The notes under the pieces: model-generated | What the model saw: only the letters and a program-made list of their open reading frames with translations | What the model was told of the DNA's origin: nothing | Databases searched by the model: none | Shown here: in pieces, positions 10,951-59,478 of the stretch | How the letters are laid out: each line of letters begins with the position of its first letter | Numbering within the stretch: position 1 is the stretch's first letter | Program-made: the position numbers and the translations under genes | Source of the DNA: Mobula birostris | Lineage: Eukaryota | DNA: 64,000 nucleotides | NCBI RefSeq assembly: GCF_030028105.1 | Contig: NC_092379.1 | Coordinates: 25,537,821-25,601,820 of the forward strand | Reading direction: 5' to 3'

Positions 10951-12096
10951 GGAAGATGAACAGGAAGTTAAATTCACGAACTCAACGTTTCAAGGGCATC
11001 TTCTTTCCCTCGGTAATCTAATTTACAAATGGACAAGGAAACCGTAAATGCTATTTCACAATATGTTCTTTATTTTGCATTAGGTTATTTAAGACACTTT
11101 TTAAATATACTTGCAAATTGTATTTTTCTGATTTTTTTAAAATCTATTTTAAAGTACTGTTGGCACATAAACCAACAAAAAATATCACGATATATATCAG
11201 TAATATTAAACTTCTTGCTCAGTGTAATTTGTACAAAAAGTTCTCTCAGTGAAGTATGATGAGCTCCTGTAATGCTTGACTTTTACATTTTGTTATCGCT
11301 AGACCACTCTACCTGTGCTTTGCACCATTGAAGATAATAAAGGTATAATTTGGCAATTGAATGATAGCTGAACAGTCGTCGTAGTGGATGATTTTCGTGA
11401 TTTCTGATTGGTGCGGTCTTCTCAGGAGAAGTAATGTCGTTTACGATAGGAACCGGTAACAAGTGAACTAGTGGGGATCAATTGTTTTCTTGAGAACAGC
11501 AAACTCGGTCAGTAATTTAACTTTCTGCGTAATCATAGGGCAGGTGAACTCCACAACCCACACTTCCAATCCCATCTTATTGATTACAACACATAACCTC
11601 GAACAGGTTTGTAGAGGCATTGCACCAGAGATTTAAATACTATTCAAAATAAGTGCATGTAATATTGGATCATTTTCTCAATAAATAAATGAACAAGTAT
11701 GATGTGTTTTGTGTTTAGGACTTACATAAAGATCTACTCACATTTATGTCTAATGACGCAGAAATGGCGAAATTCTGCAGAGTTCACAAGCTCTCTGGCA
11801 CCACTCTATCAATAATTATATCAGACCTTCTGAATCAGGCTCATTCTTTGTTTATAAATAAACCAGACCTTAATTAGTTATCAGGAGCGGCTGAAGGAAA
11901 TTCCTACGATAGTAGACCTAAACTTGTTTCAGATTCCTTTGGGACGTGTTGCAGTAGACCAGTACGCTTAACATCCTAAAGTTCTATATATACAGTTAAC
12001 AGAGGAAAGTTTGCCACTGCAATTCCGCATTAGTGGCTGCAAGCTTGTGGCAAAGAGACCGAAACAGGCAGCAGCTGTGCCTCAGATACCATCTGC

Positions 12097-12135
12097 AGTT
12101 ATTGTACGAGGATAGGATCTGTTTCCACCACTGTG
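12097..12135 (-). other. Recombination signal sequence (23-bp spacer) of V1
   Basis: CACAGTG + GTGGAAACAGATCCTATCCTCGT (23 nt) + ACAATAACT, directly after the last V codon. Confidence 0.95.
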
Positions 12136-12437
12136 AGGTGCAGCACAATAATACGTTGCCATATCATATATCCGCATCGCGGGAATGGTCAAACGATACT
12201 CCATTTGGTCCTCCTGGACTACGTCAGCAAACCGGCCTTTGGCAAAATCCGCCTGAAAGACGTTATCACCAAGTGTGCTTCGCTGAGCCACAAACTCGAT
12301 CTGCCTACCAAGGTTTTGGCGATACCAAAATAAGTAATTAGCATCTCTGGTGTAGCTGCACGTGAAGGTAATGCGTTCGCCCTCAGTCCCGGTGAGTGAA
12401 GATTCCCGCTGAGTCACTGAAACGCCATCAATCAGAT
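12136..12437 (-). CDS. TCR alpha/delta-type V exon (V1), intact
   Basis: Acceptor CCCTATATTCTAG. 302-nt open phase-1 exon: LIDG-VSVTQRESSLTGTEGERITFTCSYTRDANYLFWYRQNLGRQIEFVAQRSTLGDNVFQADFAKGRFADVVQEDQMEYRLTIPAMRIYDMATYYCAAP. Cys23, Trp41 and D-x-A-x-Y-Y-C are intact. The V call is firm; alpha versus delta is not resolved. Confidence 0.92.
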
Positions 12438-13017
12438 CTAGAATATAGGGTGAATTAATATTTCATATTAAGAAACAATTAGCTGACCGCAGCCTGGCTG
12501 TTAACATAAAATAATATAAACTTACTACAGACTGTATAGTATGTTTTGTACCGACTGATACTTTCACAACACTACATTTCAAACTTATATACCTCAGGTT
12601 CTTGTTTACATTTATTCTTGTAATTCTCATCCAGTAATTCAGATAATGCAGCATATGCATCTGTATCATTATTAGATGACGACATTTCAACTGTCAACTG
12701 TCAAGCAGCAATGAACATAAATCTGAAGTTTTTGTTCATCTGATATCAGCGATGCAGTTATAGATAGTCTTTTGAACTCTATTCATTTTGAATATATTTT
12801 TGAATATATTCAAAAGTGAAAATTGACTCTACTTCCTGGTTTCTCATGAAGAAATATACAAACTGAAGTCCCCATGCTGACGGTTCAAACCTCAAGCCCT
12901 CCGTTTACTCTATACATACTTTATTTTAAACTGATAACTGACTCTAAAAGTCTGAAACAGTTCCATCCGCTGCATCCGAATAAATTAGTCACCATTAATA
13001 ACGGCTTCTGTTCTTAC

Positions 13018-13063
13018 CAATAATCAATGAAACCCACAACGTAACGAGTGAGTGGTGTCGCAT
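13018..13063 (-). CDS. Leader exon of V1 (MRHHSLVTLWVSLII)
   Basis: ATG + 14 codons + G, then a GTAAGA donor. 46 nt, phase 1, splices in frame to the V exon over a 580-bp intron. A homologous decayed leader lies upstream of V2. Confidence 0.85.
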
Positions 13064-13106
13064 TTTCTACTCCAAAAATGCCGAAACTTCTGAGTTTGAC
13101 AAGGAT

Positions 13107-13560
13107 CTGTTTCAGTCGAAGCAAGCAGCTGAGAAGAAGAGAGTGAGCAATCGGGTACAAGAAAGTTTTTTTTTAAACACTGCTCGGGGCGAAGGGTCTG
13201 CACTGCGCAGGCGCGTGACGTAACGCGCCAAGGTTAAAAAAAAAAGAATAATTTTCAACAGTTCTTGTTTATGTCGAAGCAATCAGCTGAGAAGAAGGGT
13301 GTGAGAAATCGGGTAGAAAACGTCTTTTGTTTTTAACTCTGCTAGGGGCGGAGTGCCTGAACTGCGCAGGCGCGTGACGTAAAATGCCAAGGCTTAAAAA
13401 GAGGAATTTTCAACGGTTCTTGTTCCAGTCAAAGCAAGCAGCTGAGAAGAAGGTTTTGAGAAATCGGGTAGAAAAATACTTTTTTTTAAACACTGCTCGG
13501 GGAGAAGGATCTGCACTGCGCAGGCGCGTGACGTAGAGCGCCGGGGTTTAAAAACAGACC
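13107..13560 (+). repeat. Three ~155-158-bp tandem units in the CR1 5' UTR
   Basis: GTC(G/A)AAGCAA(G/T)CAGCTGAGAAGAAG at 13115, 13273 and 13428. CTGCGCAGGCGCGTGACGTA at 13203, 13362 and 13516. Confidence 0.9.
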
Positions 13561-16500
13561 ACCATATACAGCGGCCATCGTTGTAGCGTCCATCGTCTGA
13601 GTGGACTCAGTCAGAGTCGGACAGCTTTTGCTCAACAGACTTCAGCGAGAACAGGCAGATGCCAGGGTAGGTTCCGGTAAGTTTTTTTCTTTGTGCAGAT
13701 TATTCAGAGTAGAGAGAATTCCAGGCAGAATGTTGGAATGCTCCTCTTGCAAAGTCACCTGCAAGAAGTGCATCCAGCTGCAGCTCCTAACAAAACCGCG
13801 TTAGGGAAATGGAGCCTGAGCTAGATGACCTCATGATCATTCGGAGAATGAGGAGATTGTAGATAGTAGCTACAGGGAGGTAGTTACGCCAAAGGAGCAG
13901 AGCACAAGAAATTGGGTCACTGTCAGCTAAGGTAGAGGAAAGGACAGGCAGAGCAGGGTTTCCCTGTGGCCATTCCCCTCACCAACAAGTATACTGCATT
14001 GGATACTGTTGTGGGGGATGACTTACCTGGGACAAGCTGCAGCAGTCAGATGTCTGGCACTGAGTCTGGCTCTGCAGTGCAGAAGGGAGGGTGGAAAAAG
14101 AGGACAGCGATAGTGATAGGGGACTCGATAGTTAGAGGTACAGATAGGAAGTTCCTTGGTCGTGACAGAGAATCCAGGATGGTTTGTTGCCTCCCGGGTG
14201 CCAGGGTCAAGGATGTCTCTGATCGCTTGCATGACATTCTCAACTGGGAGGGTGATCAGCCAGATGTCGTGGTGCACATCGGTACCAGTGACATAGCAAG
14301 GAAAAGCAGGACCTCGAGCGTAGTAATCTCAGGATTGCTACAGTTGCTACGTGCCAGTGAAGGTAAGAATAGGATGCTCTGGAGGATGAACAAGTGGTTG
14401 TGGAACTGGTGTAAGAGGCAGGGTTTCAGATTTCAGATCATTGGGATCTCTTCTGGGGCAGGTGGGACCTGTACAAGAGAGACGGGTTGCACTTGAACTA
14501 CAAGGGGACCAATATCCTTTCAGGGAGGTTTGTTAGTGCTGTTGGGAGGCTTTAAACTAGATTTTCAGAGGGATGGAAACCAGAGCTGAGAGTGTGGTTG
14601 GGGTGAAAATAAATGAGGTTAAAAGTTCAAGCAAAGTCACGAATAGAAAAATTGTGATTGGTGACAAAAATCCTCTGAGGTGTATATATTTCAGTGCTAG
14701 GAGAATTGCGGGGAAGGCGGACGAGTTGAGGGCGTAGATTGACAAGTGGAATTATGACGTTATAGCAATTAGAGAAACTTAGCTACAGGAGGGGCAGGCC
14801 TGGCGGCTTAATGTTCCAGGATTCCGGTGTTTCAGATGTGAGAGAGGCAGACGGATGGAAGTTGGGGGGCGGGGAGGTAGCATTGCTCGTCAGGGAAAAT
14901 GTTGCAGCAGTGCTCAGGCAGGACGGATTAGAGGGCTTGTGTACTGAGTCCTTATGGGTGGAGCTGATAACAGGAAAAGTATGGCCACATTAGTGGGGTT
15001 GTATTATAGACCACCCAATAGTCAGCGAGAATTGGAGGACCAAATCTGCAGAGAGATAGCACACACCTGCAGGAAACATAAAGTTGTGGTGTTCGTAGAT
15101 TTTAATCTTCAATATATTGTTTGGGACTCCCATACTGTTAGGGGTCTAGATGGTTTAGAGTTTGTAAAATGTGTTCAGGAATCTTTGCTAAATCAATAGG
15201 TATAACTACCAACTACAGAGGATGCAATATTGGATTTTCTGGTAGGAATGAGTTAGGACAAGTGACGGAAGTGTGTGTAGCGGAGCACTTTTTTTTCCAG
15301 TTATCATAACAACATTAGTTTCAACTTGAACATGGAGAAGCATATATCTGGTCCTAGGATTGAGGTTCTGAACTGGAAGAATGCCAAATTTGTAGAAATG
15401 AGAAAGGATCTGAAAAGCCTGTATTGGGACAGTTTGTTCTCTGGCAAGATTGTGATCGGTAAGTGGGAAGCCTTCAAAGGAGACATTTTGAGAGTGCAGA
15501 ACTTGTATATATCTGATAGGATTAAAGGCAAAGTGAATAGGAATAAGGAACCTTGGTTCTCAAGGGATATTGACACTCTGATAAAGAAGAAGAGAGAGTC
15601 GTATAACATGTATAGGAAACCAGGAGTAAGTAAGGTGCTTGAGGAGTATAAACAGTACAAGAAAGTACTTAAGAAATAAATCAGAAGGACTAAAAGAAGA
15701 CATGAGGTTGCCTTGGCAGTCAAAGTGAAGGATAATCCAAAAAGCTTTCACAGGTATATTAAGAGTAAAAGGATTGTAAGGGATAAAATTGGTCCTCGTG
15801 AAGATCAGAGTGTTCGGCTATGTGTGGAACCAAAAGAAATTGGGGAGATCTTAAATGTTTGTTTGTTGTTTTTTTTTTCCGTCTGTATTTACTAAGTAAA
15901 CGTCTATGAAGTCTATGGAATTAAGGGAAACATGTAATGAGATCATGGAAACTGTACAGATTGAAAAGGAGGAGGTGTTTGCTATCTTTAGGCAAGTTAA
16001 AGTGGATAAATCTCCAGGACCTGACAGGGTATTCCCTCGGACCTCGAAGGAGACTAGTGTTGAAAATACAGGGGCCCTGGCAGATATATTTAAAATGTCG
16101 GTGTCTACGGGTGAGGTGTCAGAGGATTGGAGAGCAGCTCGTGTTGTTCCGTTGTTTAAAACACGGATCGAAAAGTAATCCGGGAATTTATAGGCCGGTA
16201 AGTGTGACGTCGGTAGGTGGTAAGTTATTGGAGGGAGTACTAAGAGACAGATTCTGCAAACAATTGTATAGACAGGGACTTATTAGGGAGTCAGCATGGC
16301 TTTGTGCGTGCGAAGTCATGTTTGACCAATCTATTGCAGTTTTTCGAGGTTACCAGGAAAGTGGATGAAGGGAAGGCAGTGAATGTTGTCTACATGGACT
16401 TCAGTAAGGCCTTTGACAAGGTCCCGCATGGGAGGTTAATTAGGAAATTTCTGTCGCTAGGTATACATGGAGAGGTGGTAAAATAGATTAGGCATTGGCT

Positions 16501-17591
16501 CAATGGAAAAAGCCAAAGAGTGGTAGTAGAGAATTGATTCTCTGAGTGGAGGTCTGTGGCTAGTGGAGTGCCACAGGTATCAGTGCTGGGTCCATTGTTA
16601 TTTGTCATCTATATCAATGATCTGGATGATAATGTGGTAAATTGGACCAGCAAGTTTGCTGATAATACAAAATTGGTCTAGTGGACAGTGAGGAAGGTTT
16701 TCAGATCCTGCAGAAGGACTTGGACCAGCTGGAAAAATGGGCTGAAAATGGCAGATAGAGTTTAATACAGACAAGTGTGAGACATTACACTTTGGAAGGA
16801 CAAATTACGGTAGAACATACAGGGTAAATGATAAGGCATTGAAGAGTGCAGTAGAACAGAGGGATCTGGGAATACAGATACAACATTCCCTAAAAGCGGA
16901 GTCACAGGTAGATAGGGTCGTAAAGAGAGCTTTTGGTACTTTCGCCTTTATTAATCAAAGTATTGAGTTTAAGGGCTGGAATGTTATGATGAAGTTGCAT
17001 AAGACATTGGTGAGGCCGAATCTGGAATATTGTGTTGAAGTTTGGTCACTAAATTACAGGAAGGATGTTAATGAGGTTGAAAGAGTGCAGAGAAGGTTTA
17101 CAAGGATGTTGCCGGGACTTGACAAACTCAGTTACATAGAATGGTTGAATAGGTTAGGACTTTATTCCCTGGAGCGTAGACTAACGAGAGGAGATTCGAT
17201 AGAGGTATATAAAATTATGATGGGTATAGACAGAGTGAATGCAAGCAGGCTTTTTCCACTGAGGCAAGTGTAGAAAAAAAAAAAAAAAACAAAGGACATG
17301 GTTTAAGGGTGAGGGGGAAAAAGTTTAAAGGGAACATTAGGAGGGACTTCTTCACACAGAGAGTAGTGGGAGTATGGAAGGAGCTGATAGACGAGGTGGT
17401 AAATGCGTGTTCTTTTTCACATTTAAGAATAGATTGGACAGATAATGGATGGGAGGTGCATGGAGGGATATGGTCCGTGTTCAGGTCAGTGGGACTAGGT
17501 AGAAAATAGTTCGGCACAGCCAAGATGGGCCAAAAGACCTGTTTCAGTGCTGTAGTTTTTCTATGGTTTCTAAGGTTTATATGGTTTATAT
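13107..17591 (+). mobile_element. Near-full-length CR1 LINE (5' UTR, ORF1 with Cys motif and GDSL-like esterase, ORF2 APE+RT), frameshifted
   Basis: ORF1: MLECSSCK..CKKCIQLQLL and VIGDSIVRG..RMVCCLPGARV. ORF2: GLYYRPPNS, YRPVSVTSV, YMDFSKAFDKVPHGRL and GPLLFVI. The 3' tail is made of TTT(C/A)TATGG-like repeats. Confidence 0.92.
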
Positions 17592-17900
17592 GGATGACAT
17601 GGAGAGAGAAGACCAGACTGGGTAATAATGCGTCATTTACTGAGGAGCTGATAGCAGTATTTTTTTTTTTTTTTATATAACTTAGTTTGTTAAGGCTTGG
17701 GTGCCTACGCGACAGCAAAACGTATTCTGATTTCATCGAATTCAAACGGCAGATTGGTGTATTAAAATGCAAAATGTCAAAAGAAAGCAGTAAGTGTATG
17801 TGTCAGATATCTGAGAATACCAGAGATCCAGAATTGACTTCGTTTTCCTGGCATTTTATTGACACTTCTATTGATACTATTTTATTTTATTTTAATTTAA
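17592..17900 (-). promoter_or_regulatory. Displaced native upstream (promoter) region of V1
   Basis: Aligns with the sequence directly upstream of the V2 leader (~34140-34420). Contains a CRE/AP-1-like TGACGCA on the minus strand. Promoter function is inferred from position. Confidence 0.65.
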
Positions 17901-18084
17901 TATAATTCTTATAAAATAATAAGAATAATTATTATAATGATTATACTTTATCCTTTATTTTCGCCAGACAATCGATACTAAAACGTGCAACAATCATAGC
18001 GATATTTGATTCTGCGCTTCCCCCTCCCTAGATTACAATTCGATAGGAAATATGAAACATTAAATTATAAATCGTAAACAGAAA

Positions 18085-18487
18085 ATATAAAAATGGAAAG
18101 TAAGCTAGTCCAAAACAAAAACTGAGGTGCAGGTCCGGATATTTGGAGGGCACAGCCCAGTGCCGTGTCAGGATATGTTGAGCAGTCTTATCACAGTTGG
18201 AAAGAAGCTATTCCCAAATCTGGCCGTTCGGGTCTTCAAGCTCCTGAGCCTTCTCCCGGAGGGAAAAGGGACGAAAAGTGTGTTGGCAGGGTGGGTCGTA
18301 TCCTTGATTATCCTGCAGCTGTACTCCAACAGTGTGCGGTGTAAAGTGAGTGCAAGGACGGAAGATTGGTTTGTGTGATGTGCTGCGCCGTGTTCATGAA
18401 GTTCTGCAGCTTCTTCCGTTCTTGGACAGGACAACTTCCATACCAGATTGTGATGGAACCTAGAAGAATGCTTTGTACGGTGCATCT
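18085..18487 (-). mobile_element. L2/Rex1-like LINE 3' fragment
   Basis: HPANTLFVPFPSGRRLRSLKTRTARFGNSFFPTVIRLLN, a typical C-terminus of this clade. Confidence 0.8.
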
Positions 18488-18514
18488 ATTAAAAAAAAAA
18501 TATATACATATTTA

Positions 18515-18830
18515 TGGCTGACCTGGGATCCAACTCAATCCCGTACACCAGACTTCTCTCCGTATTATTTTATACCCTCACCAAACAAGAAACTGTCAAT
18601 TTCCGATTTAAATATACCCACGGTCTTGACTACCACAGTCTGCAGCAGAGACTTCCGAAGATACAGTACCGTGTGGGCAAAAACAAAATTTTCCTTTCTT
18701 GTATTCCAAAAGACCACCGTTAATTCTGAGGCTGTGGTCTTTCGCTTTAGATACTCCCAATTTAGGAACCATGCTCTCCACAGCCATCTTATCCAGTCCA
18801 TTCAATATACCTCATCGGGCTAAATTTTTT
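18515..18830 (-). mobile_element. CR1 3'-end fragment
   Basis: GHSLRI-like piece and FKSEIDSFL, followed by a CR1 3' UTR. Confidence 0.7.
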
Positions 18831-19087
18831 TTTTTTTTTTTTTTTTTTGGCATGCTGACTCTGAAACTGGATCAGAATTGAATGTATAGTGAGGAATAAT
18901 TTCTTTCATGAGTTTCTATTTTATAGAAAGACTTTGGTGAATAATAGGATTGTGTCAATGCATGTTGTCAGTTTGACTTATATTGCCGCAGGGTTCTGCA
19001 ACGTGTTGGGTTGTTCTTTCCCCTGGCACTTTCTACATGTCTATATATGTCTATATATTCCGAAAGAATCAATCTTTGTCACTTGTT

Positions 19088-19410
19088 GCCAATATACAGG
19101 AGGACACACCAGGAGCAAGGGAGATTGTGACGCCAATGCACTGACTGGTGAAGTGTCGCATCACCTGGAAGGACTGTTTGTGGCACTGAAGAATAGTAAG
19201 GGAGGAAGCACAAAGTCACGTGTAACATTTGTTCCACCTCTGCCGATAAATGCCAGGAGCTAGGCCAGTAGGGATGAACCAATTCGCAAGTGAATTACGT
19301 AAGGAGTAACCATACGGAAAACAGTTAGCGATGAGGGGTGGGAGATGTGTTTGCTGATGCGTTTGGAAATGGCATAATTTCCGGATGATTCCAGAAAACA
19401 GAAACATAAA
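19088..19410 (-). mobile_element. Penelope-like element fragment (region leading into the GIY-YIG endonuclease)
   Basis: Minus-strand pieces YSLRNSL, KQSFQVMRHFT and VLLYIG resemble the PLE C-terminal region. Paralogue at 51690-52010. Confidence 0.7.
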
Positions 19411-23867: not shown

Positions 23868-24147
23868 AGTTAAACTATTAAGATGGAGCCTACTCCGGGA
23901 ACATTCAGAAGTGAGCACACAAACATATTGCGGTGTAAGATAGGCGCAAACGTGAATGGTAAGTGATACTCTCTTTCTGAGAACTGCACGACATCAGGAT
24001 ATTGGCCTTTCAGGAAATCGACCTGCAGTTTTAGCGTCCTGTTCTGACTCCTCGGATCGTAATTATCTGCTTCTCGTTTGGATTAGTGGAGTACCAGGGG
24101 AACGCGGTTCCTTCTATCCATCCCATCGCTGTACAACCTAGAAACTG
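23868..24147 (-). pseudogene. Eroded TCR V remnant with degenerate RSS
   Basis: Frameshifted minus-strand pieces FLGCTAMGWIEGTAFPWY (Cys...Trp), QVDFLKGQYPDVVQFSEREYHL (matches QADFAKGRFADVVQEDQMEYRL of V1) and a final TGT GCT. The 3' flank (23830-23876) aligns with the post-RSS flank of V1-V4. Confidence 0.72.
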
Positions 24148-29210: not shown

Positions 29211-29917
29211 AAGCATAGTTTTTTTTTTCAGCTGTCCAATGTCTTCTCTTGCCGCTCTTTTAAAAAATTATCAGAAGAAATTTTTGGTACAACTTTAAAA
29301 TCATTGGCTGACAGATTTTTTTTTTATACCGCCTTTACATATTTAATCATTTTTTTTACTGTTCAATACTGCTAAGTTTTCGATCATTGCGGTCCTTCGA
29401 AGGGAGCTTATGACGTTCACGATGGGACAGATAACACTTAGGCTAATGGGGATCAATTGCTTCCTTGGGATTAGCTGGCTCTGACAGTGACGTGCCTTTG
29501 TGTGCATTTTTTTTATATACGACAGGGCACCACTTCAACCCACACCATCAATATCATATCAGTCATTAGAACATCTGAATCCAAATATTACTTGTAGTGG
29601 CATCACACCAGGGGTTCACACACTTATTCCAATCAATATACGTAATATTGGAGCATTTTTTCAATAAATAAAATAACAAGTGTAATGTGTTTTGTGTTAT
29701 TTGTTTAATTGGACATCCTTTATCTAATTTTATGGCATACGTGTAATAGTTAGTTATCAGCTCCTCATAAGCCGCCAGTCCACGTGCATTACCGATAATG
29801 GCTGCTTCCAGAAGCATAGTGCCTATAAAATGAGCCACTGCACTTCGGTATCAATGCCTGGATGTTTGTGTCAAAGAGACCGAAACAAACAGCAACTGTG
29901 CCTCAGAAACCTTCGGC

Positions 29918-29956
29918 AGCTATTGTATGAGGATAGAATCTGTTCCTACCACTGTG
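29918..29956 (-). other. 23-RSS of pseudogene V2
   Basis: CACAGTG + GTAGGAACAGATTCTATCCTCAT (23 nt) + ACAATAGCT. Confidence 0.9.
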
Positions 29957-30038
29957 AATTACCGCACGATGATACGTTGTCATCTCATGGTGCCGCGGGA
30001 ATGATTAAACGATACCCCATTTGTTCCTCTTGGACTAT
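29957..30038 (-). pseudogene. V2 pseudogene, 3' part of V exon
   Basis: IVQEEQMGYRLIIPA matches V1 FR3. It carries a 5-nt deletion and Cys104 TGT changed to CGT. Confidence 0.88.
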
Positions 30039-33000
30039 GGAACGTAGAACATAGAACATAGATTAGTACAGCACCGTACAGGTCCTTCGGCCCACAATGT
30101 TTGCCGAAACTCAAACTCTGCCTCTCATATAAGCCCCCAACTTAAATTCCTCCATATACCTGTCTGGTAGTCTCTTAAACTTCACTAGTGAATTTGCCTC
30201 CACCACTGACTCAGGCAGTGCATTCCAAGCACCAACCACTCTCTGAATAAAAAACCTTCATCTATTACACCCCTTGAATTTCCCACCCCTTACCTTAAAG
30301 CCATGTCCCCTTGTATTGAGCAGTGGTGCCCTGGGGAAGAGGCGCTGACTATCAACTCTATCTATTCATCTTATTATCTTGTGCACCTCTATCATGTCTC
30401 CTCTCATCCTCCTTCTCTCCAAAGAGTAAAGCCCTAGCACCCTTAATCCCTGATCATAATGCATACACTCTAAACCAGCATTCTGGTAAATCTCCTCTGT
30501 GCCTTTCCAATGCTTCCACATCCTTCCTATAGTGAGGCGACCAGAAATGGACACAGTACTCCAAGTGTGGCCTAACCAGAGTTTTATAGAGCTGCATCAT
30601 TACATCGCGACTCTGAAACTCTATCCCTCGACTTATGAAAGCTAACACCCCATAAGCTATCTTAACTACCCTATCCACATGTGAGACAACTTTAAGGGTT
30701 CTCTGGACATGTACACCCAGATCCCTCTGCTCCTCCAGACTATGAATTATCCTGCCATTTACTTTGTACTCTGCCTTGGAGTTTGTCATTACAAAGTGTA
30801 TCACCTCACATTTCTCTGGGTTGAACTCCATTTGCCACTTCGCAGCCCACTACTGCATCCTATCAATGTCTCTCTGCAATCTTTGACAATCCTCTGCACT
30901 ATCTACAACACCACCAAACTTTGCGTCGTCTGCAAACTTGCCAACCCACCCTTCTACACCCACATTCAGGTCGTTAATAAAAATCACGAAAAGTAGAGGT
31001 CCCAGAACAGATCCTTGTGGGACACCACTAGTCACCATCCTCCGATCTGAATGTACTCTATCCACCACGACCCTCTGCCTTCTGAAGGCAAGCAAATTCT
31101 GAATCCACTTGGCAAGCTTCCCTGGATCCCGTGCCTTCTAACTTTCTGAATAAGCCTACCGTGTGGAAACTTGTCAGATGCCGTACTAAAATCCATATAG
31201 ATCACATCCACAGCACTACCCTCATCCATATGCCTGGTCACCTCCTCAAATAATTCTATCAGGCTTGTTAGACACGATCTGCCCTCACAAAGCCATGCTG
31301 ACTGTCCTTGATCAGACCATGATTCTCTAAATCCCAGAGATCCTATCTCTAAGAATCTTTTCCAACAGATTTCCCACCACAGACGTAAGGCTCACTGGTC
31401 TATAATCACCCGGACTTATCCTATTACCTCGTTCGAACACGCCTCCGGTACCATTTCCGTGGACAACGAGAACATAAAGATACTAGCAAGAGGCTCAGAA
31501 ATCTCTTCCCTCACTTCGTGAACAAGCCTATGGAATATTTTGTCAGGCCCCGAGGACTAATCCTTCCTAATGTATTTTAACAACTCCAACACCTCCTCTC
31601 CTTTAATATCAACATGCTCCAGAACATCAACCTCACTCAGATTGTTCTTAACATCATCAAAGTTCCCTCTCATTTGTGAATACTGAAAGAAGTATTCATT
31701 GAGGTCCTCGCTCACTTCCACAGCCTCCAGGCACATCTTAACACCGTTATCTCTAATCGGTCCCACCTTCACTCCTGTCATCGTTTTTTCTATTCACATA
31801 ATTGAAGAATGCTTTGGGGTTTTCCTTTACCCTACTCGCCAAGGCCTTCTCATGTCCCCTTCTTGCTCTTCTCAGTCCCTCCTTAAGCTCCTTCCTTACT
31901 TCCCTATATTCCTCAATAGACCCACCTGATCCCTGCTTCCTAAACCTAATTTATGCTGCCTTCTTCCACCTGACTGGACTTTCCACCTCACTTGTCACCC
32001 GTGGTTCCTGCACCCTACCATTCTTTATCTTCCTCACCGGGACAAATTTATCCCTAACATCCTGCAAGAGATCTCTAAACATCGACCACATGTCAAAAGT
32101 CCATTTCCGAGCAAAAACTTCATCCCAATTCACACCCGCAAGATCTAGCCTTTTAGCCTCATAATTTGCCCTTCCCAATCAAAAAAAAAAATCTTGTCCT
32201 CTCTGATTCTATCCTTTTCCATGATAATGCTAAAGGCCAGCGAGCGCTGGTCACTGTCCCCCAGATGCTCACCCACTGAGAGAACTGTGACCTGATCTGG
32301 TTTATTGCCGATTACTAGATCTAGTATGACTTTTTTCTCTATTCGGCCTGTCCACATACTGTGACAGGAATCCGTCCTGGACACACTTAACACACTCTGG
32401 CCCATCTAAACCCTTCGAACTATTCAGGTGCCAATCAATATTAGGGAAGTTAAAGTCACCCATGATAACAACCCTGTTATTTTTTTGCAACCTTCTAAAA
32501 TCTGCCTCCCAATCAACTCCTCTGTATCTCTGCTGCTACCGGGGGGGGGGGTGGCTATAGAATACCCCCGATGGAGTAACTGCTCCCTTCCTGTTCCTGA
32601 CTTCCATCCACACTGACTGAAAAGAGGATCCTGCTACATTACCCACCCTTTCTGTAGCTGTAATAGTATCCCTGACCAGTAATGCCACCCCTCCTCCCCT
32701 TTTTCCACCCTCTCTATCCCTTTTAAAGCGTTGCAATCCAGGAATATTGAGAATCCATTCCTGCCCTGGTGCCAGCCAAGTCTCTGTAATGGCCACTACA
32801 TCATAATTTCATGTATGTATCCAAGCTCTCAGCTCATCACCATTGTTCCTGATGCTTCTTGCATTGAGGTACACACATTTCAGCCCTTCTACCTTACTGT
32901 CTTTACACCGTTTATTCTGCTTCTCTTTCCTCAAAACCTCTCTATATTTTTAGATCTGACTTTACTCCATGCACTTCTTCCACTGCTCTATCGCTCTGGG

Positions 33001-33327
33001 TCCCATCCTCCTTGCAACATAGTTTAAACCCTCCCGAACCATGCCAGCGATCCTACCTGCAAAGATATTGCTCCCTCTCGAATTAAAGTGCAACTCATCC
33101 AATTTCTACATGTCCCACCTTCCCCAGAAGAGATCCCAATGATCCAAATATCTGAAATCCAGCTTCCAGCACCAACTCCTCAGCCACGTATTCAATTGCC
33201 ATCTCCTCCAATTCTTATCATCACTGTCACGTAGCAGTGGCAGCAATCCTGAGAACGCCACCCTTGAGGTCCTGTTCTTCAGCCTTCTGCCTAGTTCCCG
33301 AAACTGACACTTCAGGACTTCATCCCG
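30039..33327 (-). mobile_element. 5'-truncated CR1 LINE inserted inside the V2 exon
   Basis: RT motifs [18 protein letters not shown] and KFADDAK. Endonuclease piece VVIMGDFNFPNIDW. 3' tail (TTCTATG)n. Flanked by an apparent ATAG duplication (30035-38 and 33328-31). Confidence 0.92.
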
Positions 33328-33545
33328 CTATATCACCAAACCTGCCTTCAGGATAATCAGCCTGAATACCCTTGTCACTTCGTGTGCTTCGCCAGACCAA
33401 GATCTCAACCCTTATACCGTAGTTTTGGCGAAACTAAAATAAATAATAAGCATCACAATGTAGATGTATGTCAAGGTAATGCAATCGCTCTCAAACCCTG
33501 TGAGTACGGATTCTCGCTGAGCCACAGGTTCAGCATTACCCGGAT
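33328..33545 (-). pseudogene. V2 pseudogene, 5' part of V exon
   Basis: Acceptor AG at 33546-47. PGNAEPVAQRESVLTGFESDCITLTYIY (Cys23 to Tyr), a 1-nt deletion, Trp41 changed to TAG, then FRQNYGIRVEILVWRSTRSDKGIQADYPEGRFGDI. Confidence 0.88.
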
Positions 33546-34050
33546 CTTAAATATCGAGAGAACTAAGCTTCTTAACTTTCGTATTAAAACTAATTGGGTG
33601 CACCTCGCGTGGCTGTTTGCAGGATATTTTTTTTTTTTTCAATGACTTGTCTAGTATCTCTCTGCCCATGCAAAATTTCATAATACTTCGTCATGTCATG
33701 CAATCAAGCGTCTTTCCCTTAGGTACTTGTTTCCCTTTGAAACATTCATCTCATAAATACATAATGAAATTTCTCCTGATTTTAAAATCTAATCAAAAAT
33801 GACTGTACATCTGATGCTCCTGCTCATCTGAAGTCAACGACTCCGTTCTTTTCTAATGTAAAACGAGAATGACTTCTACCATCTACTCTCTTCTGTAGGA
33901 ATATGCACAGTCTGCTGATGGCTCAAATCTCACGCATTTACTTGATGAATGTTTTACCTGAATCTCAATTGTGACTCTAAAAGTGGCAATCTGGTCACGT
34001 TGCTGTATCCCAATGCATTAGCACCCTGTAAAAACGGGCTGTCTTCTTAT

Positions 34051-34096
34051 CAATAATCATTTCAAACCACAGCGCAGCGAATGAATGGTCTTATGT
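34051..34096 (-). pseudogene. Inactivated leader exon of V2
   Basis: Gapless 46-nt homologue of the V1 leader. The start reads ACA instead of ATG and the donor reads ATAAG instead of GTAAG. Confidence 0.8.
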
Positions 34097-36189
34097 TTTC
34101 TATTCCAAAGACGCAGACTCTTCTGAGCTTCTGGTCCTGGTTTGGCGTTAATGAAATGAAAATAGAAGCGCCGAGTGGGTGCACAGGTGTCATTTCCTGA
34201 AGAGCTGAGAGATGTCTTTGTTCTTCTGGATTTGGTTGGTCGGCTATGTTTGCCTATGAGTCAGTGAAGCGTGTTATGCAGAATTAGTAGATTAAAGTAC
34301 AAAATCTGAAAAGGAAGCACCGAGTGCATGTCCCAGATACAGGGGAATGCCAGAAAGCCCGAATTGATTTCGATTTTCATGGCTTTTTATCGACATTTCG
34401 ATGTGTATTATTTTATTTTAATCGAATATATAATTCTTTAATAATCACAATAATAATAATAATAACAACAACAACAATAACAATTATGCCAAGGGAGTGA
34501 AGACACCATCCAGCTCACTCCATTACAGGATCCTCCAGCTATGTAACTTAATCTGACTATTTGCATCGTCGCAATGAAATGACGAACATAATTCACCAGG
34601 ATTTTGCTTTGAAGTAGGATCTCATAAAATAAACCATAACATACAACACATGCAGGCCTGATTCAGTTTTAGAGTCAGAATGCCACATATTATATTTCCA
34701 TTGACCCGTTTTGTTGAATGGACTATTTAAGATAGATTTCGAAAGGCTGCTTCAAGACGGAAATTCGAAATGGAGCCCATGCCTCGCATTAGGGTTAGGG
34801 TTATGATCGGGTAATGAGTCGAACGCCGAAGTAATGTGTGCATATACCACATCCATCGTTCTGTATTCACTAACTTGTTTTCTCATCTTGTTGACAGCAA
34901 AAAAAAAAAAAAAAAGAAAAGAAAAAAAGGCTGGTAAAACAGGCTCTTCTCCTCACGATAAACACTGGTCTATAATTCATGTGATTTTACCTATAACCAT
35001 TTTTGAACAATGCAGCAACGTTAAAATCATCGAAACGTCTGTTACAACTCATGACCGGGGGTGGGGGGGGGGGGGCGAAAGTATGGATAAAAACGTCCTG
35101 CCATAATTTTCCTTTCTCTATGGGCCCAAGCTGACCGGAATCATCTGAGTATGTTCGGACATACCCCCAGATATGTTCTGTGGATTTTGCTTATGGCGTT
35201 GTACCTATTTTTTCTTTCGAAGTTCGTTTCGAATTTCATCGCAGTTCTCCTTTCCCGGATTATGTACTTCCCGACATCATCTGCAGTTTCGTCTTTCGAT
35301 GTCTATATTGCAGGTAAAGAGTTGGTAAATATTTTAAATGCTCTACCACGGGCTGGTCTGCCAGACAACCAGCTTCATTTCCAGAAGTAGATCAGGTGGG
35401 GCTTCTGTGGTTGTCTGGTACACTCTCATGACATTGTGTTTGCTGACCCACACGATTTAAGCTCTAATGAATGCGGTTTTCTTGTTGGATACAAACAGCC
35501 ACTAGTAAGCTCACTGAAAGGATATCACACTGTAACTCCCCAATCTGCAAATTATCGTTTATCCATTTTTTTTATTCTGAACTATTCCAACGATGGTTTC
35601 CCTCCCCTAATTTAGTTTGAAACAAGGTTCATATATTTTCAAGGAAACACTCTCAAGTGTAAAACAAAAATCATAAAACAAATCTTAAACCCAGCTGGGT
35701 TCAATATACAATATGGAACTACTGAGTCGTTATCTTGAATTTTGAAACATTTAGAAATATTTCAGAGAAGGCAAACTATTTTCTGAACCTGAACATTCAG
35801 CATTTCTTAAATCTATTTCCAGTGAACTCCAAAGTCATCTCAAATATGCAGAAAAAAAACGTGTTTTTAGAGTAGAAACGAAAGCTGGAAGGATAGGTTC
35901 TAATTATTTCTTGCCTGTTTCTGTTGGCGACCCGATTACTAAGAAGCGTGAAACTTTCCCTATGCTTATACCCTATTTATACCTCAGGGAGTTTGTATGA
36001 AATCTCTTTGTCTCAGATATTATTTACACAAAACGATTTAAAAACATATTTTGGAGACTTTGATCTTCGCTGGCTGCTATGCATGTTGTACGCGATAGAC
36101 ACTTCCAAACTCCAGGAATATAAGTCGAGAAAAAGTGAAAATAAGCATGAAACATTGATAAGAGAATCGGGAATGGAATCGGAAGTTTA

Positions 36190-49500: not shown

Positions 49501-50740
49501 CACTCTTCTGACTGTTAACATTACGGAACATGGATAGGAGTTTAAATTCACGTACTCAACTTTTCAAGGACTACTCCTTTACCTCGGTAATCTAATTTAC
49601 AAATGGACAATGAAACCATAAATGCTATTTCCCAATATGGTCTACATTTTCGTTTAGTTTATTTAAGACAACTTTTAAATACCCTTGCCAAGAGTATTTT
49701 TCAGATTTTTAATTATTATCTATTTTAAAGTACTGTTGGCACATAAACAAACAAAAATCACGATATATACCAGTGATATTAAGCTTCTGGCTCAGTGTAA
49801 TAGGTACAAAAATAGTCTCGTAATGTATGATGAGCTCCTGAGGAGAACATATACCGATCTGGGTAGAAAGCTGGAATGCTTGAGTTTTATATTTTGTTAT
49901 CGCCAGACCGCTCTGCCTGTGCCACACACCAGTAAAGATAATGGAGTTGCAGTTAGGCAATTGAATGATGGCTGACCATACGTCAGAGTGGATGAATTTT
50001 GTGATTTTTAATTAATGCGATCTTTTTAGGAGAAGTAATGTCGTTTACGATCGGAAGGTGTAGCACTTGAACGAGTGGGGATCAGTTGTTTTCTTCAGAA
50101 TAGCAGGCTCTGTCAGTAACTGAACTTTCTGTGTCATCATAGGGCAGGGCACCTCTACCATCCACAATTCCTATTTCATCTTATTGATTGCAACACGTGC
50201 CCTCGAATAAGTTTTGTAGAGGCATTACCCCAGAGGTTCAAATACTATTTTTTTTTAAAAATGCACATAAAAGTGGATCATTTTCTCAAAAATACATGAA
50301 CAAGTATGATGTGTTTAGTGTGTAGGACTTACATAAATATCTAATCACATTTATGTAATACTGACGCAGAAATGGTGAAATTCTGCAAGGTTCACAAACT
50401 CTCTAGCACCACTCTATCTATAATTATATCAGACCTTCTTGATTCAGGCTCATTCTTTGATTCCTATACACCAGAACTTAAGTAGCTATCAGGAGCGGCT
50501 GAAGCAAATTCCTTCGATAGTAGACCTACATTTGCTTTAGGTTCCTTTCGGGCGTGTTTCAGTAGACCAATACACTTAACGTCCGAAAAGTCTATATATA
50601 TATATATATATGTATCTATATCTATATATACAGTTAGCAGAGTAAAATCAGAATTAGCCAATGCAATTCCGCACCAATAGCTGGAATCTTGTGGCAAAGA
50701 GACCGAAACAAACAGCAGCTGTGCCTCAGACACCTTCTGC

Positions 50741-50779
50741 AGTTATTGTAAGAGTATAGAATCTGTTTCCACCACTGTG
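50741..50779 (-). other. 23-RSS of pseudogene V3
   Basis: CACAGTG + GTGGAAACAGATTCTATACTCTT (23 nt) + ACAATAACT. Confidence 0.93.
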
Positions 50780-51081
50780 AGGTACAGCACACTAATACGT
50801 TGCCAAACCATATAGCCGCATCGCCGGGATAGTCAAACGATACTCTATTTGCCCTTCCTGGACTACATCAGTAAACCGGCCTTTGGCAAAATCCGCCTGT
50901 TTGTAGTTGCCACCACATGCGTTTCGCCAAGCCATAAACTTGACCTGTCTACCAGGATTTTGGCGATACCAAAATAAGTAACTAACAACATTGCTGTAGC
51001 TGCACGTGAAGGTAATGCGTTCGCCCTCAGTCCCGGTGAGTGAGGATTCCCGCTAATTCACTGAAACGCCATCACTCAGAT
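50780..51081 (-). pseudogene. V3 pseudogene (paralogue of V1), two in-frame stops, no leader found
   Basis: 302-nt exon, same length as V1: LSDGVSVN*RESSLTGTEGERITFTCSYSNVVSYLFWYRQNPGRQVKFMAWRNACGGNYKQADFAKGRFTDVVQEGQIEYRLTIPAMRLYGLATY*CAVP. Intron homology to V1 ends at ~51535. Confidence 0.9.
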
Positions 51082-51544
51082 CTGGAATATAGGAAGAATT
51101 AATATTACATATTCAAAATCAACTGGCTGCACGAGGCGAGGCTGTTTACATTTAATAAAATAAACTTTATAAGGAATTGTATAGTATGTTATTTGCCTAA
51201 TGAAACTTCCACGATACCTCTTCACTTCAAACTTGTATCACTCAGGTCCTTGTTTTCATTATATTCTTGTAAATTTCATCCTGTACTTCAGATGATGCAG
51301 CATATGCATCTGTACCATTATTAGATGACGAAATATCAACTGTCAATCAGAAATCAACATAAATCTGATAATTTTGTTGATGTGAAATCAGCGATACAGA
51401 TATAGATACAGTCTTTCGACGTCTGTCCTTTTTTAGTATAAAATGAAAATAGACTCTATTTTCTATTTTCTCCTGAAGAAATATACAAACCGAAGCCCCC
51501 AAGCTGACGGTTAAAATTTCAAGCATTCAGTTTATAAACGCAAA

Positions 51545-52010
51545 CAACAGGAAATCTGCAGATGCTGGAAATTCAAGCCACACACATCAAAGTTGCTGGT
51601 GAACGCAGCAAGCCAGGGAGCATCTCTAGGAAGAGGTGCAGTCGACGTTTCAGGCCCAGACCCTTCCTGACGAATACAGGAATCCAGTATACAGGAGGAC
51701 ACACCAGGAGTACAGGAGATAGTGACCTTAATATACCCACTCGTGAAGTGTCGCCTTACCTGGAGGGACTGTTTGGGGCACTGAAGAATAGTAAGGGAAG
51801 AAGTGTAGGTGCAGGTGTAGTACTTGTTCCCCCTGTGCCGATAAATGCCAGGAACGAGGGCAGTAGGGAGGGACTAATGGGCAAGTGAATTACGCAGGGA
51901 GTGATTTCTATGGAAAGCAGTAAGCGTGGACGGGTTCGAGATGTGCTTGATGGTGAGCTCTCGTTGGAGATGACATAAGTTCCGGAGAATTCCGGACAAC
52001 AGAAAACGAG
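51545..52010 (-). mobile_element. Penelope-like element terminal repeat plus ORF fragment
   Basis: GAAATCTGCAGATGCTGGAAATTCAAGC..GTCGACGTTTC terminus, which I recall as common in ray genomes. It is joined to a region homologous to 19088-19410. Confidence 0.65.
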
Positions 52011-59165: not shown

Positions 59166-59478
59166 ATAATCATGGACCGCTCTGCACAATAATATGTAGC
59201 TGTGTCAGACAGCCAGACCCCTCTGATAGTTAGTTGGAATTCCTTGAATGAATCTTCTACTGTTTCAAGGAAACGGTCTTCAGCGAAGTGGGCCTTGATT
59301 GAAGTTTTGTCCTTTATGCCTCTCCCGACGGCAAATTCCGGCTCTCGACCTGGGTATTGGCGGTGCCAAGACAAGTAATAGGCACTCTTGGTGTACATGC
59401 AGGTCAAAGTAACGACGTCCCACTTTTTCCGTGTGAGGGATGATTCCCGGTGTTTTATGCCATTGGGGTCAGCCAAGC
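59166..59478 (-). CDS. TCR alpha/delta-type V exon (V4), open frame, different subfamily from V1
   Basis: Acceptor TTCTCCTTTCGTTAAGCAG. Translation GLADPNGIKHRESSLTRKKWDVVTLTCMYTKSAYYLSWHRQYPGREPEFAVGRGIKDKTSIKAHFAEDRFLETVEDSFKEFQLTIRGVWLSDTATYYCAERSMI. Cys, Trp and DTATYYC are intact. Confidence 0.9.

What the first reader, a model, noticed from the sequence alone, without database searches (positions are those of the whole stretch)
13063..17900. A 4.5-kb CR1 LINE inserted ~44 bp upstream of the V1 start codon displaced its promoter
V1 and V2 upstream sequences match up to TTCTGAG (~13095 versus ~34127). V1 then switches to CR1, and the match to V2's upstream region resumes right after the CR1 tail at ~17592. 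A GGAT at both junctions (13103-06 and 17592-95) may be a target-site duplication. V1 therefore has an intact ORF, splice sites and RSS but no adjacent native promoter. It is either a silent gene that would be annotated as functional or it is driven by the LINE.
Basis: partly seen in the sequence, partly recalled or inferred. Interest (0 to 1): 0.7.

Follow-up and report, generated by a model that had tools for sequence, protein, structure and literature searches.

The report
LINE-fused 5' end of a V gene
An old, dead CR1-type jumping gene sits head-to-head about 40 bases in front of an intact T-cell-receptor-type V gene segment of a ray, and public RNA data show the V gene is still transcribed and correctly spliced, with a leader that runs into the jumping gene, so it is not silent.

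Summary
A 4.5-kb CR1-group LINE lies on the + strand from about 13096-13108 to 17595. It has 2.8 tandem 155-bp 5' monomers, an esterase-type ORF1, APE and RT remnants, and a (TTTATATGG)n tail. It sits 33-45 bp upstream of the ATG (13063-13061) of a minus-strand V segment. Removing it restores colinearity with the upstream region of paralogue V2 (E 6e-33). The proposed GGAT target-site duplication is not above chance.

The element is old. It is riddled with frameshifts, and DNA of a second species, about 4% diverged, appears to carry the same 5' junction.

V1 is intact and it is not silent. One spliced contig joins 13137-13018 to 12437-12057, and a second run shows the same leader-to-V form. 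Both use the predicted donor and acceptor.

The leader reaches at least 74 nt upstream of the ATG, which is 30-40 nt into LINE monomer 1 in antisense. This rules out a promoter confined to the retained ~44 bp.

The contigs run through the RSS, so they are germline transcripts. V1 use in rearranged receptors is not shown, and the true start site is unmapped.

The most likely source is antisense or bidirectional initiation in the CpG-retaining monomers, which carry CRE-like motifs. This is a new example of a known kind: a TE-derived promoter or 5' UTR.

The parts
12097..12135 (-). V1 recombination signal: heptamer CACAGTG (12135-12129), 23-nt spacer, nonamer ACAATAACT (12105-12097)
   Evidence: pattern scan; sequence
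12136..12437 (-). V1 V exon (302 nt). It holds the end of the signal peptide and a V-set domain with FTC, WYRQ and YYCA landmarks.
   Evidence: Pfam V-set E 1.6e-10. Open frame. The acceptor at 12437 is used in RNA contig X1 record 1.
12438..13017 (-). V1 leader intron (580 nt, GT..AG)
   Evidence: Spliced out in the X1 and X7 contigs. RNA depth is zero at 12601-13000 in X1 and X2.
13018..13063 (-). V1 leader exon coding part (ATG 13063-13061; MRHHSLVTLWVSLII)
   Evidence: the donor at 13018/13017 is used in the RNA contigs
13064..13137 (-). Observed 5' untranslated leader of V1 transcripts (minimum extent). 13064-13095 is retained native flank and 13108-13137 is antisense LINE monomer 1.
   Evidence: X1 record 1 covers 13018-13137 with 0 mismatches, and X7 record 24 covers 13018-13114 with 0 mismatches. 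No upstream ATG.
13096..17595 (+). Full-length but decayed CR1-group LINE, head-to-head with V1. The left end is uncertain within 13096-13108.
13108..13560 (+). LINE 5' array of 2.8 x 155-bp monomers. Each has the identical 21-nt core ACTGCGCAGGCGCGTGACGTA (13202-13222, 13361-13381, 13515-13535). CpG o/e is 1.19. The antisense strand of monomer 1 carries a TATA-like run (13177-13166) and an Inr-like TCACTCT (A at 13144).
   Evidence: TRF; alignment A1; CpG counts; motif coordinates
13936..14552 (+). LINE ORF1 remnant: SGNH esterase type (GDSIV motif), frameshifted
   Evidence: PDB 4c1b (ZfL2-1 ORF1p esterase) E 4.2e-12; weak Pfam Lipase_GDSL_2 hit; frame map
14561..17506 (+). LINE ORF2 remnant (APE endonuclease around 14954-15199, RT around 16244-16680, C-terminal region to 17506), broken by many frameshifts and stops
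   Evidence: Pfam Exo_endo_phos_2 E 3e-7 and RVT_1 E 1.6e-4; frame map
17558..17593 (+). LINE 3' tail: (TTTATATGG) x 4, no poly-A
   Evidence: TRF
17596..17937 (-). Displaced ancestral upstream region of V1, homologous to V2 34150-34465. The best-kept block is 17630-17651, which reads TCAGCTCCTCAGTAAATGACGC on the V strand. That block would lie about 72 nt upstream of the ATG without the LINE.
   Evidence: No RNA contig cover in three runs apart from a T-run artefact.

Best explanation
A full-length CR1-group LINE retrotransposed, in opposite orientation, into the 5' flank of a TCR-type V gene segment, 33-45 bp upstream of its start codon. This cut the segment off from the upstream sequence it shares with its paralogue V2.

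The element has since decayed, and the insertion appears to be shared with a second ray species. V1 nevertheless kept an intact leader, intron, V exon and 23-RSS, and it is still transcribed and correctly spliced.

Its transcripts carry a 5' leader that continues without a break into the antisense strand of the LINE's first 5' monomer. Transcription therefore starts inside the LINE.

Most likely the start comes from antisense (bidirectional) activity of the CpG-retaining 155-bp monomers. On the V strand each monomer offers a CRE-like TTACGTCA next to a GC-rich NRF1-like core. Monomer 1 follows this with a TATA-like A/T run and, 33 nt further on, an Inr-like TCACTCT about 81 nt upstream of the ATG.

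Shown: the insertion, V1's integrity, the splicing, and the LINE sequence in the leader. Inferred: the exact start site, promoter activity of the monomers, and use of V1 in rearranged receptors.
For: Insertion and displaced homology: (composite HSP E 6e-33).

LINE identity.

V1 integrity: 116-codon spliced ORF, 23-RSS, V-set domain.

RNA evidence:
- X1 has a 501-nt contig joining 13137-13018 to 12437-12057, with 0 and 2 mismatches.
- X7 has a 160-nt contig covering 13018-13114. The depth pattern suggests its other ~63 nt lie in the V exon.
- X2 has a contig covering 12075-12430.
- The intron has no cover in X1 or X2, so these are RNA and not DNA.
- All four listed runs of study P1 hold V1 exon words.

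Second species, DNA run X12: contigs tile 12001-13135 at about 96% identity, and a 483-nt contig reaches 13135.

Monomer features:
- CpG o/e is 1.19 against 0.29-0.52 in the LINE body.
- A 21-nt core is identical in all three monomers.
- The antisense strand of the monomer array has no ATG, where about 4.5 are expected. V1's AUG is therefore the first AUG for any start within the array.

Only about 0.6% of family copies reach the monomers, judged by X12 depth of about 5,700 against about 900,000. The full-length state of this copy is therefore unusual.

A read-through transcript from the old promoter would carry 45 upstream ATGs and 4 poly(A) hexamers.
Against: - All laid runs are assembled contigs, which cannot show a transcript start.
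- The RNA contig ends at 13137 and the second species' DNA contig ends at 13135. Both ends are probably graph breaks at the repeat, so the true start could lie anywhere further upstream.
- The runs are only guessed to be RNA, and tissue is unknown.
- The contigs run through the RSS. Only germline (unrearranged) transcripts are seen, and no V1-J joint.
- The high CpG of the monomers may reflect the family consensus rather than hypomethylation.
- The motif matches (CRE-like, TATA-like, Inr-like) were found by eye or regular expression, with no functional test.
- The second-species contig has only 28-40 nt on the LINE side of the junction.
Confidence: 0.6

Rival explanations
1. The ancestral V promoter at 17596-17700 still fires. 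V1 transcripts are long read-throughs across the antisense LINE, and the contig simply breaks at 13137 because of repeats.
For: The contig ends at 13137 (RNA) and 13135 (DNA of another species) suggest repeat-induced breaks rather than a true start. The conserved block 17630-17651 is still present.
Against: - There is no RNA contig cover of the unique sequence 17596-18000 in three runs, except an 18-nt T-run artefact. This is weak evidence if the native start lay downstream of the insertion point.
- A 4.5-kb antisense leader would contain 45 ATGs and 4 poly(A) hexamers.
- No splice joint from the LINE tail to the 13131 region was reported.
Confidence: 0.12
2. The transcripts are incidental LINE-promoter noise in non-lymphoid or all tissues. 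V1 has effectively dropped out of the receptor repertoire, being poorly expressed after rearrangement or seldom rearranged, and is an intact-looking relic.
For: Only unrearranged transcripts are seen. The contigs run unbroken through the RSS to 12057 and 12075. All four listed runs of the study hold V1 words, which suggests broad rather than lymphoid-specific expression. Both close paralogues, V2 and V3, are pseudogenes.
Against: The V1 ORF, splice sites and RSS are intact although the LINE around it has decayed heavily. Exon divergence to the second species (about 2-3%) is no higher than in the intron and flank (about 4-5%). Contigs drop rare variants, so rearranged forms could have been missed.
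Confidence: 0.25
3. The start lies within the antisense LINE but outside the monomer array, at a cryptic site in the ORF1/ORF2 remnant.
For: Contigs cannot exclude it. LINE-body cover in the RNA runs is swamped by other copies.
Against: The first upstream ATGs appear just beyond the array, at 13565-13593. Such leaders would therefore carry uAUGs. The body is CpG-depleted and the monomers are not.
Confidence: 0.1

Closest known systems
LINE-1 antisense promoter (ASP) chimeric transcripts of mammals, and TE-initiated alternative promoters in general (reviews such as PMC7913837; PMC12587700)
   Same: A LINE 5' region lies upstream of a host gene in opposite orientation. The host transcript carries antisense LINE sequence at its 5' end, spliced or continuous with the gene's exons.
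   Different: Here the element is a CR1-group LINE rather than L1. The candidate promoter is the outermost 5' monomer rather than an internal 5'UTR/ORF1 site. The driven unit is a recombining antigen-receptor V segment, and the LINE replaces the only proximal promoter rather than adding one. The start site is not mapped.
Mouse L1 5' monomer arrays (A, Tf and Gf monomers of about 200 bp; recalled from general knowledge) and the 5' repeating subunits reported for some vertebrate CR1-group elements (PMC13343379)
   Same: Tandem 100-500-bp subunits at the LINE 5' end, presumed to be the element's promoter. Here there are 2.8 x 155 bp.
   Different: PMC13343379 reports such subunits in ORF1(-) elements, whereas this copy has an esterase ORF1. 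Antisense activity of CR1 monomers has not, to my knowledge, been described.
Canonical CR1 / CR1-group LINEs (ZfL2-1 ORF1p esterase, PDB 4c1b, PMC3905857; PMC13343379)
   Same: Esterase ORF1 plus an APE-RT ORF2, about 4.5 kb long, a short tandem-repeat 3' tail instead of poly-A, and massive 5' truncation of family copies.
   Different: No RT phylogeny was done, so CR1 proper versus L2 rests on literature rules: chondrichthyan L2 lack ORF1, and only Zenon has poly-A.
Germline V-segment promoters of TCR/Ig loci (for example the CRE-containing decamer of TCR V-beta promoters; recalled from general knowledge)
   Same: A proximal promoter within about 100-200 bp of the leader ATG drives germline and, after joining, rearranged transcripts. 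A CRE-type motif lies near -70 to -160.
   Different: The CRE-like motif now nearest to V1 belongs to the LINE monomer (-154 to -160). The ancestral TGACGCA block is 4.5 kb away.

Membership tests
CR1-group non-LTR retrotransposon (LINE) | ORF2 with an APE-type endonuclease and a reverse transcriptase | tested here: met
   Pfam Exo_endo_phos_2 E 3.1e-7, above the cut-off. RVT_1 E 1.6e-4, on a 60-aa fragment and below the cut-off. The frames are broken.
CR1-group non-LTR retrotransposon (LINE) | Esterase (SGNH)-type ORF1 | tested here: met
   phmmer against PDB 4c1b (ZfL2-1 ORF1p esterase) gives E 4.2e-12, with the GDSIV motif aligned. The identity of 4c1b is confirmed in PMC3905857.
CR1-group non-LTR retrotransposon (LINE) | 3' end made of short tandem repeats, with no poly-A tail | tested here: met
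   (TTTATATGG) x 4 at 17558-17593. PMC13343379 says poly-A is unique to Zenon within the group.
CR1-group non-LTR retrotransposon (LINE) | RT phylogeny placing it in canonical CR1 rather than L2, Rex1 or Zenon | not tested
   No reference RT set was available offline. The assignment rests on the ORF1 rule from PMC13343379.
CR1-group non-LTR retrotransposon (LINE) | Target-site duplication flanking the insert | tested here: inconclusive
   GGAT (4 nt) and TGACA (5 nt) are both shared at the junctions. 67% of random pairs share a 4-mer.
Functional germline V gene segment (TCR alpha/delta type) | Leader exon, intron and V exon with an open frame and conserved Cys-Trp-Cys landmarks | tested here: met
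   116-codon spliced ORF. Pfam V-set. The splice is used in RNA.
Functional germline V gene segment (TCR alpha/delta type) | Canonical RSS | tested here: met
   CACAGTG, 23-nt spacer, ACAATAACT
Functional germline V gene segment (TCR alpha/delta type) | Found rearranged to J (and D) in expressed receptor transcripts | tested here: inconclusive
   Only contigs running through the RSS were seen. Contigs drop rare forms, and tissue is unknown.
Functional germline V gene segment (TCR alpha/delta type) | Assignment to the alpha/delta locus | tested here: inconclusive
   Atlas feature hits include TCR alpha/delta and beta V clusters. Earlier scan notes place a TCR alpha/delta V array on the same piece. 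No C or J region lies in the window.
TE-derived promoter / LINE antisense chimeric transcript | Host transcript whose 5' end contains TE sequence contiguous with the gene's first exon | tested here: met
   X1 contig 13137-13018 joined to 12437-12057, with 0 mismatches across the junction
TE-derived promoter / LINE antisense chimeric transcript | Transcription start mapped inside the TE | not testable with these tools
   Only contigs were available, and they cannot show starts.
TE-derived promoter / LINE antisense chimeric transcript | Promoter activity of the TE fragment in the gene's orientation | not tested
   Needs a reporter assay. Only motif and CpG evidence is available.

The most novel reading that the evidence does not exclude
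The antisense face of a CR1 LINE's 5' monomer array was co-opted as the working promoter of a T-cell-receptor V segment after the insertion removed the native one. Only a rare full-length insertion could have rescued the gene. The arrangement has been kept under selection in at least two ray species, and V1 is used in the repertoire from this LINE-derived promoter.
Probability: 0.3. Interest if true: 0.65.

Novelty: new member of a known kind. Interest (0 to 1): 0.45.

Why it matters
V-segment promoters control germline transcription, and with it accessibility to RAG. They also control expression of the rearranged receptor chain. A natural case in which a LINE has replaced the whole proximal promoter, yet the segment stays intact and transcribed, is a ready-made experiment. 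It can show how much promoter identity matters for V usage in an early-branching jawed vertebrate. It would also be a first hint that CR1 5' monomers act bidirectionally.

For annotation, the case shows that a V segment with no native promoter should not be called silent without RNA evidence. Conversely, the transcription seen here is germline only, so a 'functional' label still needs repertoire data.

Tried and rejected
- **GGAT as a target-site duplication:** rejected as uninformative.
- **Fixing the junction by scanning all break-point pairs against V2:** the scores are flat over 13095-13118 and 17580-17591.
- **V3 (50729-51052) as a better empty-site comparator:** not usable. Its homology to V1 stops at 12907/51534 and resumes at 19089/51684. 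The leader and the whole insertion site are therefore deleted and replaced by about 150 bp of another repeat.
- **The search for homologous proteins with the V domain:** no candidates. This blank says little.
- **PDB search of the V domain:** dominated by multi-domain scFvs and useless for locus assignment.
- **PDB search of the ORF2 C-terminal piece:** nothing relevant.
- **Rfam on 12000-18200:** no match.
- **The 9-mer GACGTAACG shared by the LINE monomer and the V4 upstream region:** about one such match is expected by chance (my own estimate), so it was dropped.
- **RNA 'cover' at 17601-17800:** traced to an 18-nt T-run match of an unrelated contig.
- **Assembly artefact:** rejected. The source-sample DNA runs hold all junction words. 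RNA contigs from other samples and DNA of another species cross the 5' junction.
- **Earlier scan notes searched by words and by sequence for the monomer:** nothing found.
Full report
**What is in the sequence**

The window holds a translocon-type array of antigen-receptor V segments on the minus strand. V1 consists of:
- a leader exon with its ATG at 13063-13061, coding part 13063-13018;
- a 580-nt GT..AG intron;
- a V exon at 12437-12136;
- a canonical RSS: CACAGTG, a 23-nt spacer, then ACAATAACT.

The spliced frame is 116 codons with no stop. It shows the Cys, WYRQ and YYCA landmarks of a V-set domain.

Language-model look-alikes are V-set clusters that include TCR alpha/delta and beta V families. 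Earlier notes of this scan describe the genome as a ray with a TCR alpha/delta V array on the same piece. I take the locus label from those notes as a lead and not as a test.

**The observation**

V1 and V2 align from 12875 to 13097 against 33913-34130, and again from 17749 to 17937 against 34278-34465. When 13096-17595 is removed, a single HSP runs across the junction: 590 columns, 65% identity, E 6e-33 (alignment).

The 4.5 kb in between is a LINE on the + strand, head-to-head with V1. Its parts are:
- 2.8 tandem 155-bp monomers at 13108-13542;
- an ORF1 remnant that matches the ZfL2-1 SGNH esterase, PDB 4c1b, at E 4e-12;
- APE and RT remnants;
- a (TTTATATGG)x4 tail with no poly-A.

Every reading frame is broken many times, so the copy is dead and old.

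A 2026 survey of CR1-group elements (PMC13343379) reports three relevant points. Esterase ORF1s occur only in CR1 and L2 among vertebrate members. Chondrichthyan L2 lack ORF1. Only Zenon has poly-A. 'CR1' is therefore the best label, although I ran no RT phylogeny.

Summed contig depth in a second species' DNA run gives independent boundaries. It jumps from about 8 to about 5,700 at 13001-13200 and drops from about 480,000 to 2 after 17600. It also shows the classical 5'-truncation gradient: only about 0.6% of family copies reach the monomers.

**What does not hold**

The GGAT 'target-site duplication' is not evidence. Two thirds of random pairs of pieces of that size share a 4-mer, and a 5-mer, TGACA, is shared at the junctions as well. 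The left junction can be placed only within 13096-13108, because that stretch aligns about equally well to V2 and to the monomer consensus.

V2, the comparator, is itself a pseudogene. Its ATG reads ATA, its donor reads GATAAG and it contains stops. Its V exon is split by another LINE at about 30038-33333.

The closer paralogue V3 shares 73% of amino acids with V1 and has a stop in YYC. It has lost the whole leader and insertion region.

**Expression**

Two searches for public runs found the following:
- four DNA runs of the probable source sample;
- four small runs of one study in the same organism, guessed to be RNA;
- runs of a second organism.

I laid three of the RNA-type runs and one DNA run of the second organism on 12001-18000.

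- **Run X1** holds a 501-nt contig whose first 120 nt lie on 13137-13018 with 0 mismatches. Its remaining 381 nt lie on 12437-12057 with 2 mismatches. This is exactly the predicted leader-to-V splice.
- **Run X7** holds a 160-nt contig covering 13018-13114 with 0 mismatches. Its other ~63 nt match the V exon by depth.
- **Run X2** holds a contig covering 12075-12430.

In X1 and X2 the intron at 12601-13000 has zero cover. The material is therefore RNA, and V1 is transcribed and correctly spliced.

The leader reaches at least 74 nt upstream of the ATG. That is 30-40 nt into the antisense strand of LINE monomer 1. A promoter confined to the retained 33-45 bp is therefore excluded, and the 'silent gene' reading is wrong.

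The contigs continue through the RSS. What is seen is germline (unrearranged) transcription, and I saw no V1-J joints.

**Where transcription starts**

Contigs cannot show a start. The RNA contig ends at 13137 and the other species' DNA contig ends at 13135. These ends are what a de Bruijn graph would give if the repeated (LINE) sequence begins at about 13106-13108. I therefore read them as repeat breaks rather than as the start site. The start is at or upstream of 13137.

The monomers are the most plausible source, for these reasons:
- They keep CpG at the expected frequency (o/e 1.19), while the rest of the LINE is depleted (0.29-0.52).
- The 21-nt core ACTGCGCAGGCGCGTGACGTA is identical in all three monomers.
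- On the V strand, monomer 1 reads TTACGTCA (CRE-like; the shared heptamer TACGTCA at 13222-13216), then a GC-rich core, then TTTAAAAAAAAA (13177-13166). An Inr-like TCACTCT, with its A at 13144, follows 33 nt downstream of the start of that A/T run.
- The whole antisense monomer array contains no ATG, against about 4.5 expected. V1's AUG would be the first AUG for any start in the array.

By contrast, a read-through from the displaced native region would carry 45 upstream ATGs and 4 poly(A) hexamers. The unique sequence 17596-18000 has no RNA cover beyond a T-run artefact.

These points are inferences and are not a mapped promoter.

**Age**

DNA contigs of the second organism tile 12001-13135 at about 96% identity. 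One 483-nt contig runs from 12653 to 13135, which is 28-40 nt past the junction. This is at the edge of the tool's 31-nt bridging rule.

The insertion is therefore probably older than the split of the two species. It is not a recent polymorphism, which fits the decay of the element. An RNA-type run of the second organism holds 31% of V1 exon words. That is about what a fully covered orthologue at 96% identity would give. It is a lead that the orthologue is expressed too.

**Comparison with known systems**

The arrangement works like the antisense-promoter chimeric transcripts of mammalian L1, and like TE-initiated transcripts in general. Three things are unusual:
- the element type, a CR1-group LINE with 5' monomers; PMC13343379 reports such subunits only in ORF1(-) elements;
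- the target, a recombining V segment;
- the fact that the TE replaces the proximal promoter rather than supplementing it.

My literature searches found no case of a TE-derived V-segment promoter, but they were shallow.

**Verdict**

It is a new example of a known kind and is of moderate interest.

Noticed in passing
window 29909-30038 + 33329-33525 (V2 exon halves), 30038-33333: The V exon of V2 is split by a second CR1-like LINE in minus orientation, 65-73% identical to the V1 LINE. V2 also lacks the ATG and the donor and has in-frame stops, so it is a pseudogene several times over.
   Followed up: partly
window 50729-51052 and 51534-51684: V3, the closest paralogue of V1 (80% nt, 73% aa), has a stop in the YYC motif. 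The region equivalent to V1 12907-19089 (leader, insertion site, upstream) is replaced in V3 by about 150 bp of an unrelated repeat.
   Followed up: partly
window 59183-59458 (V exon), leader ATG about 60181: V4 is an intact, more distant V segment (42% aa to V1). It has the RSS CACAATG-23-ACAATAACT and an upstream ATTGG plus GGACGTAACG about 85-100 nt before the ATG.
   Followed up: no
window 23873-24082 (-): Weak V-like ORF (phmmer E 1.6e-4 to V1), possibly another V relic.
   Followed up: no
window 12601-12800: Run X7 shows contig depth of about 6 inside the V1 leader intron, where X1 and X2 have none. It may be an intronic repeat, an unspliced transcript or an unrelated contig. A 39-nt palindrome lies nearby, at 12782-12820.
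   Followed up: no
window 17601-17870: The second organism's DNA run tiles the V1 side (12001-13135) but shows almost no cover of the unique right flank at >=90% identity. The 3' junction could not be confirmed in that species.
   Followed up: no
window 17274-17293: An A20 run lies inside the LINE ORF2 C-terminal remnant, about 300 bp before the true 3' end. It could be mistaken for a poly-A tail.
   Followed up: partly
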